DNA from: Octopus bimaculoides
Lineage: Eukaryota
Assembly (NCBI RefSeq): GCF_001194135.2
Contig: NC_068993.1
Span: forward strand, 59,896,051-59,948,696
DNA: 52,646 nucleotides
Direction of reading: 5' to 3'
Shown one piece after another: positions 33,070 through 33,140 of the stretch (positions are counted from its first letter, which is position 1; each line of letters begins with the position of its first letter). Made by a program: the position numbers and the translations under genes. The notes under the pieces were generated by a model. The model made no database searches and was not told where the DNA came from. It saw only the letters and a list, made by a program, of their open reading frames with translations.

Positions 33070-33140
33070 CAAAATGGCGACCAGCTGGCAGAAACGTTAG
33101 CCCGGCGGGGTAACGTATCTGCCAGCTCGGCGCCATATTG
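33070..33140. other. 71-nt hairpin formed by two inverted SINE-A 5' ends
   Basis: 29 of 34 positions form Watson-Crick pairs with no bulges and a 3-nt loop (GGC, 33104-33106); each arm matches the family A start GGCGGCGAGCTGGCAGAA(T/A)CGTTA. Confidence 0.85.

What the first reader, a model, noticed from the sequence alone, without database searches (positions are those of the whole stretch)
33070..33140. Pre-miRNA-sized hairpin built from two inverted SINE heads
A 71-nt hairpin with 29/34 Watson-Crick pairs, five symmetric mismatches and a 3-nt loop. Both arms are the first ~30 nt of SINE family A, including the A-box-like TGGCAGAA; no other part of the SINE is present. Inference: a fold-back during reverse transcription or repair produced a stand-alone hairpin. 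If processed by Drosha/Dicer, it would yield small RNAs complementary to the 5' end of a very abundant SINE in both orientations, a potential self-targeting silencing locus. Alternatively it is an ADAR substrate. Established context: coleoids have a large lineage-specific miRNA expansion.
Basis: partly seen in the sequence, partly recalled or inferred. Interest (0 to 1): 0.7.

Follow-up and report, generated by a model that had tools for sequence, protein, structure and literature searches.

The report
Decayed fold-back copy of a SINE head
A 71-base palindrome made from two inverted copies of the first ~30 bases of an abundant SINE really is there, but it looks like a one-off DNA copying accident that has since been decaying, not a microRNA gene.

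Summary
Positions 33070-33140 form a 35+1+35 nt palindrome with 30/35 complementary positions (RNA MFE -47.3 kcal/mol, z = -9.7). It is the only non-microsatellite close palindrome of this size in the 52.6-kb window. Both arms are the 5' ~31 nt of a tRNA-derived SINE that occurs eight more times in the window. Neither flank holds any other SINE sequence.

The SINE 5' ends point outward. The centre (33100-33110) is a quasi-palindrome native to the SINE (GCNCG-C-CGGGC). The arms share non-consensus bases just upstream of GGCG, and both carry private changes. This fits a single fold-back or template-switch event during sense-strand DNA synthesis, nucleated at that quasi-palindrome, followed by neutral decay. 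All five mismatches are unpaired transversion-type. There are no wobble pairs, and no change is demonstrably compensatory.

The microRNA reading is untested and a priori unlikely:
- Stem length and pairing lie in the Microprocessor optimum, but the loop is 3 nt.
- There is no CNNC, basal UG or apical UGU motif.
- There is no B box for Pol III.
- No Rfam family matches.

Recurrence, conservation and expression could not be tested with the collections available. This is an ordinary new member of a known kind, of low interest.

The parts
33070..33104 (+). Left arm. From 33074 onward it is the SINE head in sense orientation (ATGGCGACCAGCTGGCAGAAACGTTAGCCCG). 33070-33073 (CAAA) lies just outside the SINE 5' end.
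33105..33105 (.). Centre of symmetry, a single unpaired base. Read on the minus strand it is the SINE-consensus C.
33106..33140 (-). Right arm: the SINE head on the minus strand (ATGGCGCCGAGCTGGCAGATACGTTACCCCG, preceded by CAAT). On this strand the SINE consensus continues through the centre (CGCCGGGC).
33100..33110 (.). Central 11 nt. This corresponds to a quasi-palindrome already present in the SINE (consensus GCACG-C-CGGGC, seen intact at about 15529-15519 on the minus strand). It is the inferred nucleation site of the fold-back.
33086..33093 (+). A-box-like TGGCAGAA of the left arm.
33117..33124 (-). A-box-like TGGCAGAT of the right arm.
33071..33074 (-). A4 on the plus strand, which is T4 at the 3' end of the hairpin on the minus strand. 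This is the only Pol III terminator-like run touching the hairpin.
33058..33068 (+). Candidate target-site duplication, left copy (TATATAACTAT), against 33142-33152 (TAAATAAATAT). It matches 9/11 and is not significant in this AT-rich context.
   Evidence: 6.7% of random sites score as well

Best explanation
This is a non-functional relic of one DNA copying accident.

A strand being synthesised in the sense direction through the 5' end of a SINE copy came off its template near SINE position 33-37. It folded back on the SINE's own short quasi-palindrome (GCNCG-C-CGGGC) and copied itself back out to, or 3-4 nt past, the SINE 5' end. The end was then joined to unrelated DNA, so the SINE body and tail are missing.

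The setting could be snap-back synthesis at a double-strand break, a replication template switch combined with a deletion, or an aborted second-strand synthesis of a SINE insertion. The sequence does not say which.

The originally near-perfect palindrome has since picked up about five to six substitutions, spread over both arms, at about the rate of other SINE copies.

What is shown: the palindrome, its SINE-head identity, the outward orientation, the native quasi-palindrome at the centre, the absence of other SINE sequence, and divergence in both arms. What is inferred: the single-event origin, the type of polymerase step, and the lack of function.
For: - The palindrome is real and unique in the window.
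- Both arms are the SINE head.
- The flanks hold no SINE remnant and are single-copy in the window.
- The arms are closer to each other (27/31) than to any other copy (at most 26/31), and they share the non-consensus AT before GGCG plus CAA upstream of it. Two independent insertions would not share flank bases.
- The centre coincides with an inverted repeat native to the SINE. With the A-to-C change seen here, the inferred 3' end folds into a GCCC/GGGC clamp with its 3' end paired.
- Each arm has private departures from the SINE consensus: left arm positions 11 and 13; right arm positions 11, 24 and 31. Each arm is 13-16% from consensus, like the full copies at 13-24%. The hairpin is therefore old and not maintained.
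- Template switching is documented to create 30-55-nt hairpin stems in one step. Such hairpins are common and only about 0.3% become miRNA genes (more than 6,000 hairpins against at least 18 miRNAs in primates; PMC10710096).
Against: - No outgroup or empty-site sequence was available, so the ancestral state is inferred, not seen.
- A pure short template switch would leave the SINE body next to the new arm. It is absent, so a deletion or end-joining step must be added.
- The candidate TSD (9/11, p = 0.067) leaves room for insertion as a unit.
- The evidence that the palindrome runs beyond the SINE 5' end rests on 3-5 bases.
- The GCCC/GGGC clamp is no more stable than in shuffled sequence (z = 0.43).
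- The all-transversion mismatch pattern (P = 0.011 post hoc) is not explained by neutral decay.
Confidence: 0.75

Rival explanations
1. It is a small-RNA gene. The hairpin is transcribed as part of a longer Pol II transcript and cropped and diced, or transcribed by Pol III from the minus-strand SINE start and terminated at the T4 as an shRNA-like RNA. It then yields ~22-nt RNAs that target SINE 5' ends.
For: The stem is 34-37 bp with 85-88% pairing, inside the published optimum of 33-39 nt and at least 82% pairing. On the minus strand an A-box-like motif sits at the proper distance from the SINE start, and a T4 run closes the hairpin. The 3' arm is antisense to the conserved SINE core GCTGGCAGAA. 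Hairpins made by template switching do sometimes become miRNAs.
Against: The terminal loop is 3 nt, against an enriched 8-16 nt and a preferred 10 nt or more. There is no CNNC at a useful distance, no basal UG and no apical UGU/GUG on either strand. No B box lies within 200 nt, and type-2 Pol III promoters need one (established knowledge). No Rfam miRNA family matches. There are five unpaired transversion mismatches, no G:U pairs and no compensatory changes. One mismatch (position 31 from the base) lies in a bulge-depleted zone. The base rate for such hairpins becoming miRNAs is about 0.3%.
Confidence: 0.03
2. Two separate SINE copies inserted in convergent orientation, and a later deletion removed both bodies and tails, leaving two heads.
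For: The SINE is dense here, at eight other copies in 52.6 kb. Inverted pairs exist, for example 15340-15551(-) and 16506-16710(+). A head-only fragment exists at 26796-26841.
Against: Both copies would have to be cut at the same SINE position, to within a base, and abut with a 1-nt spacer. The arms share non-consensus bases and 3 of 4 bases outside the SINE. They are more alike than any other pair that includes an arm.
Confidence: 0.05
3. The 71-73-bp palindrome is one copy of a mobile or amplified palindromic family (MITE-like, with SINE-head-derived terminal repeats) and was inserted as a unit.
For: A candidate flanking direct repeat matches 9/11. The unit consists of nothing but two terminal inverted repeats.
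Against: The repeat score is reached at 6.7% of random sites in this AT-rich window. There is only one copy in 52.6 kb. No transposase family is known to me that uses such ends. The arms are 14% diverged.
Confidence: 0.07
4. It acts as a passive ADAR substrate, if the region lies in an intron or UTR that is transcribed. This is compatible with the best explanation, because it is a consequence and not a selected function.
For: A duplex of 30 or more base pairs is long enough for ADAR (established knowledge). Octopus editing is concentrated in introns and 3'UTRs that hold hairpins (PMC9699675).
Against: No gene, exon or transcript evidence exists for this window. The duplex is GC-rich and short compared with pairs of full inverted SINEs.
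Confidence: 0.1
5. It is an assembly or library artefact, that is, a chimeric fold-back read in a gapped short-read draft.
For: The window is a draft with 11 runs of N. One gap lies 250 nt downstream.
Against: Artefactual fold-backs are perfect copies. Here the arms differ at 5 of 35 positions, and both differ from the SINE consensus.
Confidence: 0.02

Closest known systems
Template-switch mutations that create hairpins in one step (Ripley quasi-palindrome model; Monttinen, Frilander and Loytynoja 2023, PMC10710096; PMC8794818)
   Same: A reverse-complement copy lies next to its source. The arm length of about 30-35 nt is within their 30-55 range. The event is nucleated at a pre-existing short inverted repeat. 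It makes a stem of pri-miRNA length in a single event.
   Different: The sequence that should follow the source (the SINE body) is missing, so a deletion or end-joining step is also needed. No ancestral reconstruction was possible. There is no evidence of transcription.
Snap-back templated insertions of polymerase-theta-mediated end joining (from my own knowledge, not tested)
   Same: A 3' end folds back on a few bases of microhomology and copies its own upstream sequence. The product is then joined to another end, with loss of intervening DNA.
   Different: Typical templated inserts are shorter, from a few to about 30 nt. The enzyme cannot be inferred from sequence.
miRNAs derived from inverted transposon copies or palindromic MITEs (for example the hsa-mir-548 family from Made1; Piriyapongsa and Jordan, cited in the reference list seen)
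   Same: The hairpin arms are two inverted copies of transposable-element sequence. The products would be complementary to the element.
   Different: Those are multi-copy elements with sequenced small RNAs. Here there is one copy in the window, no small-RNA data and a 3-nt loop.
LINE twin-priming 5' inversions and snap-back of first-strand cDNA (from my own knowledge)
   Same: Inverted retroelement segments arise during insertion.
   Different: Twin priming joins an inverted 5' part to a direct 3' part of the same element. A cDNA snap-back puts the RNA 5' end at the loop. Here both arms are the same 5' segment with the 5' ends outward, and no 3' part is present.

Membership tests
   Both arms align to HMM positions 2-37. 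The 18-mer is present on both arms. Alignment.
   nhmmer finds nothing in either flank at E <= 1000. No B-box-like 11-mer with up to 2 mismatches occurs in 32900-33392. It is a fragment, not a SINE copy.
   The best flanking repeat is 9/11, reached at 6.7% of random sites. The positive control, the SINE at 42545, has 19/20.
Canonical animal miRNA gene (Drosha/Dicer; MirGeneDB-type criteria) | Stem of about 35 bp (33-39) with at least 82% pairing | tested here: met
   34 bp at 85%, or 37 bp with 3 extra basal pairs. Thresholds from PMC5340965.
Canonical animal miRNA gene (Drosha/Dicer; MirGeneDB-type criteria) | Unstructured apical loop of about 8-10 nt or more | tested here: not met
   The loop is 3 nt. 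Loops of 8-16 nt are the enriched class, 2-7 nt loops occur but are not enriched, and 10 nt or longer is preferred. This is a preference, not an absolute rule.
Canonical animal miRNA gene (Drosha/Dicer; MirGeneDB-type criteria) | Processing motifs: basal UG, apical UGU/GUG, downstream CNNC | tested here: not met
   None at the proper places on either strand. These are helpful motifs, not obligatory ones.
Canonical animal miRNA gene (Drosha/Dicer; MirGeneDB-type criteria) | Reads of ~22 nt from both arms with fixed 5' ends and 2-nt offsets | not testable with these tools
   No small-RNA data are accessible. The supplements of PMC9699675 hold no precursor sequences.
Canonical animal miRNA gene (Drosha/Dicer; MirGeneDB-type criteria) | Membership of a described miRNA family | tested here: not met
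   Rfam 15 gives no hit at gathering score in the window. The best hit is mir-3926 at 21.9 bits against 82. MirGeneDB itself was not searchable.
Template-switch or fold-back inverted duplication | Reverse-complement copy directly adjacent to its source | tested here: met
   Arms are 1 nt apart and 86% complementary. They share non-consensus bases.
Template-switch or fold-back inverted duplication | Short pre-existing inverted repeat at the switch point | tested here: met
   The SINE consensus GCACG-C-CGGGC lies exactly at the centre. The inferred 3' end pairs in a 4-bp clamp. That clamp is no more stable than in shuffles.
Template-switch or fold-back inverted duplication | Ancestral or outgroup sequence without the second arm | not testable with these tools
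   No genome of the source organism or its relatives is in the collections.
Pol III type-2 transcription unit (shRNA-like reading) | A box plus B box, followed by a T4 or longer terminator | tested here: not met
   A-box-like motifs are present on both arms. T4 is present only at the minus-strand 3' end. The B box is absent.
MITE-like palindromic mobile element | Several copies with the same ends in different flanks | tested here: inconclusive
   One copy in 52.6 kb. A genome-wide test was not possible. The 12 metagenome hits to the pattern are unrelated bacterial palindromes.

The most novel reading that the evidence does not exclude
The minus-strand copy still starts transcription at the SINE +1 through its A-box-like element, or the locus is read through from a host transcript. 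The resulting ~66-nt RNA ends at the T4 that closes the hairpin. It would be an endogenous shRNA that bypasses Drosha and is diced into small RNAs against the 5' end of a very abundant SINE, in both orientations. That would be a SINE-born, self-targeting silencing locus.
Probability: 0.02. Interest if true: 0.6.

Novelty: new member of a known kind. Interest (0 to 1): 0.15.

Why it matters
As it stands, this is one more example of how fold-back copying turns ordinary repeat sequence into a stem of microRNA-precursor length in a single step. That is the raw material from which young miRNAs are thought to arise, but most such stems never become genes. It would matter only if small-RNA data showed precise processing. 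In that case it would be a documented case of a SINE fragment converted into a silencer of its own family, in a lineage said to have a large miRNA expansion. The anatomy is a modest mechanistic point about where such fold-backs nucleate: 5' ends outward, with the junction at a quasi-palindrome native to the SINE.

Tried and rejected
1. Rfam at gathering score on the window and at E <= 10 on 32700-33500 gave only noise: mir-3926 on the palindrome and mir-297 on an (AC)n run.
2. ARAGORN found no tRNA, although the hairpin is tRNA-sized and ends in GCGCCA.
3. I scanned JGI metagenome contigs for other fold-backs with GGCAGAWWCGTTN{4,30}AACGWWTCTGCC. The 12 hits are all unrelated bacterial palindromes, and none has GAGCTG before the match.
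4. I tried to reach the source genome or relatives through ORFs. Four window ORFs, including the 40-aa ORF across the hairpin, are not on record.
5. One protein search with a stop-free translation of the SINE consensus gave a single hit, on a 543-nt ENA metagenome scaffold (L013). That scaffold carries a SINE copy but no fold-back. In hindsight this search was poor value.
6. Literature string searches failed. 10-mers of the arm were too unspecific, and 16-22-mers of the SINE gave no paper. A word search for 'SINE' mostly matched 'sinensis'.
7. The supplements of the octopus miRNA paper list only 8-mer target sites, not precursors, so no comparison was possible. Fromm et al. 2015 could not be fetched under the id I remembered.
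8. The idea that the left flank is the decayed SINE body came from a low-confidence nhmmer extension. I rejected it because the flank alone gives no hit.
9. I rejected the tRNA-half idea. The junction lies between the D-arm-like and the next stem-loop, not in an anticodon loop (my own reading).
10. The bacterial promoter and terminator scan is irrelevant for this eukaryotic sequence.
11. The organism was not verified.

Full report
**Observation**

The sequence at 33070-33140 reads CAAAATGGCGACCAGCTGGCAGAAACGTTAGCCCG-G-CGGGGTAACGTATCTGCCAGCTCGGCGCCATATTG. The repeat finder gives two 35-nt arms (33070-33104 and 33106-33140), 86% complementary, with 1 nt between them.

The five mismatches are symmetric: 33073/33137, 33080/33130, 33082/33128, 33093/33117 and 33100/33110. 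As RNA the hairpin folds at -47.3 kcal/mol, against -21.0 +/- 2.7 for shuffles (z = -9.65). As DNA it folds at -30.6 kcal/mol (z = -10.1). It survives folding with 40 nt of flank on either strand.

A scan of the whole window for close palindromes found 14. Thirteen are microsatellite or low-complexity sequence. This is the only one made of complex sequence. The hairpin is 59% G+C in flanks of 39%.

**SINE identity**

The core GCTGGCAGAAACGTTAGC, with up to 3 mismatches, occurs 7 times where 0.02 are expected. BLAST and a profile HMM built from the copies define a ~200-nt tRNA-derived SINE at:
- 3292-3475(-)
- 15346-15551(-)
- 16508-16708(+)
- 22194-22401(-)
- 29204-29390(+)
- 42545-42752(+)
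- 45924-46083(-)
- a head-only fragment at 26796-26841(+)

The copy at 42545 has a 19/20 target-site duplication.

Both arms of the hairpin align to the first ~31 nt of this SINE. The A-box-like octamer is TGGCAGAA on the left arm and TGGCAGAT on the right. The SINE HMM finds nothing in either flank taken alone, even at E <= 1000. The flanks are also unique within the window.

**Anatomy that bears on origin**

1. The SINE 5' ends are at the outer ends of the palindrome, and the junction is at SINE position ~33. A snap-back of first-strand cDNA at the RNA 5' end would place SINE position 1 in the loop, so that version of 'fold-back during reverse transcription' is excluded. The strand that folded back was being made in the sense direction, from position 1 inward. 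This is inference from orientation.

2. The central 11 nt (33100-33110) are not a new junction. They correspond to a quasi-palindrome that the SINE already has: consensus GCACG-C-CGGGC, seen for example in the copy ending at 15551. With the A-to-C change present here, the inferred 3' end folds into a GCCC/GGGC clamp with the 3' end paired (-3.2 kcal/mol). The clamp is weak and no better than shuffles, but it is a self-priming configuration. On the minus strand the SINE consensus runs through the centre (CGCCGGGC). This slightly favours the right arm as the original (2 versus 3 departures in 11 nt).

3. The arms are 27/31 identical to each other and at most 26/31 to any other copy. They share AT where the other copies with an intact 5' end (S42545, S16506, S29203, S22404rc, S46084rc) have AA before GG. 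They also share CAA further upstream, outside the SINE. My estimate of the chance of this lies between about 0.01 and 0.08, depending on where the SINE 5' end is placed. This argues for one duplication event that was blind to the SINE boundary, and against two independent insertions.

4. Both arms carry private departures from the SINE consensus: positions 11 and 13 on the left, and positions 11, 24 and 31 on the right. Each arm is 13-16% from consensus, like the full copies at 13-24%. The mismatches are therefore later substitutions in both arms, not errors of the copying polymerase. The hairpin is old and has not been kept paired. There are no G:U pairs, and no change is demonstrably compensatory.

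5. A candidate flanking direct repeat (9/11) is reached at 6.7% of random sites. This is inconclusive.

**Most likely history**

A single fold-back (template switch) was nucleated at the SINE's own quasi-palindrome. It extended back to, or a few bases past, the SINE 5' end. The product was then joined to unrelated DNA, with loss of the SINE body.

This matches the documented template-switch route to hairpins. One event can create stems of 30-55 nt. More than 6,000 such hairpins arose in primates, and at least 18 became miRNA genes, with availability of a promoter as the limiting factor (PMC10710096).

A pure short template switch would leave the SINE body in place. A break-and-join step is therefore needed: snap-back synthesis at a double-strand break, or an aborted second-strand synthesis. 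The sequence does not discriminate between these.

**Function**

For the miRNA reading:
- The stem (34 bp, or 37 with three extra basal pairs, 85-88% paired) lies within the published optimum of 33-39 nt and at least 82% pairing.

Against it:
- The loop is 3 nt. Loops of 8-16 nt are the enriched class, and 10 nt or longer is preferred.
- One mismatch lies in a bulge-depleted zone (position 31 from the base).
- No basal UG, apical UGU/GUG or suitably placed CNNC occurs on either strand.
- No Rfam family reaches threshold in the window. mir-3926 at 21.9 bits against 82 is a generic palindrome match.
- After cropping about 11 bp from the base (established rule), the precursor would be only about 49 nt, and Dicer would cut in the loop.

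The fragment has no B box, so it has no type-2 Pol III promoter of its own. One curiosity: on the minus strand the hairpin ends in T4. A Pol III transcript from the SINE start would therefore be shRNA-like. Without a B box I give this about 2%.

No ORF or other sign of a gene was found in the window, so transcription is unknown. The ADAR reading depends entirely on that.

**What could not be done**

No collection here holds the source genome or its relatives.
- A metagenome scan for fold-backs returned only bacterial palindromes.
- ORF look-ups failed.
- A protein search with a SINE translation found one 543-nt metagenome scaffold carrying a SINE copy.
- The octopus miRNA paper's supplements hold no precursor sequences.

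Recurrence, conservation, expression and even the organism therefore remain untested.

**Unexplained**

All five arm-to-arm mismatches are transversion-type (A:A, A:G, C:C, A:A, G:G), and none of the seven CpGs has decayed. Among the full SINE copies only 40% of differences from consensus are transversions (P = 0.011 post hoc). Counted as six inferred events, five are transversions (P about 0.04), and three of those are G-to-C.

**Verdict**

It is best explained as a decaying one-step fold-back of a SINE head. It is a new member of a known kind and of low interest, unless small-RNA data show precise processing.

Noticed in passing
window 33073/33137, 33080/33130, 33082/33128, 33093/33117, 33100/33110: All five arm-to-arm mismatches are transversion-type (purine:purine or C:C). 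There are no wobble pairs, and no CpG has decayed among seven. In the window's full SINE copies only 40% of changes are transversions (P = 0.011 post hoc). Three of six inferred events are G-to-C.
   Followed up: partly
window 26796-26841 (+): A second head-only SINE fragment (HMM positions 3-48), not palindromic, followed by unrelated sequence. It shows that 3'-truncated heads occur here by other routes too.
   Followed up: partly
window 15346-15551 (-) and 16508-16708 (+): Two full SINE copies lie in opposite orientation about 950 nt apart, heads facing each other across a 313-nt assembly gap. If co-transcribed, they would form a far longer duplex than the 71-nt hairpin.
   Followed up: no
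window 42525-42544 and 42752-42771: A clean 20-nt target-site duplication (19/20, TATTTACTCTGCTACC[T/A]TAA) surrounds the SINE at 42545-42751. This shows recent-looking retrotransposition and fixes the SINE 5' end near (AA)GGCGG.
   Followed up: yes
window 46084-46255: A long (ATT)n/(AAT)n-type microsatellite forms an 84-nt imperfect palindrome and abuts the 5' end of the SINE at 46083.
   Followed up: no
window gaps 658-1477, 6224-6486, 7471-8050, 15552-15864, 20121-20724, 31751-31888, 33393-33668, 43113-43654 and others: There are eleven runs of N (3,629 nt). Those I inspected are flanked by dinucleotide repeats ((TA)n, (AC)n), so these are assembly breaks at microsatellites in a short-read draft. 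One starts 253 nt after the hairpin.
   Followed up: partly
window 33317-33389 (-): A sub-threshold Rfam hit to mir-297 (27.4 bits against 90) lies on an (AC)n run. It is a low-complexity artefact.
   Followed up: yes
L013 236-398 (ENA metagenome ERZ23499442, scaffold_285125): A 543-nt scaffold from a metagenome carries a good copy of this SINE (E = 8e-43), and what looks like a second tRNA-like element at its end. This is presumably host DNA in a metagenome.
   Followed up: partly
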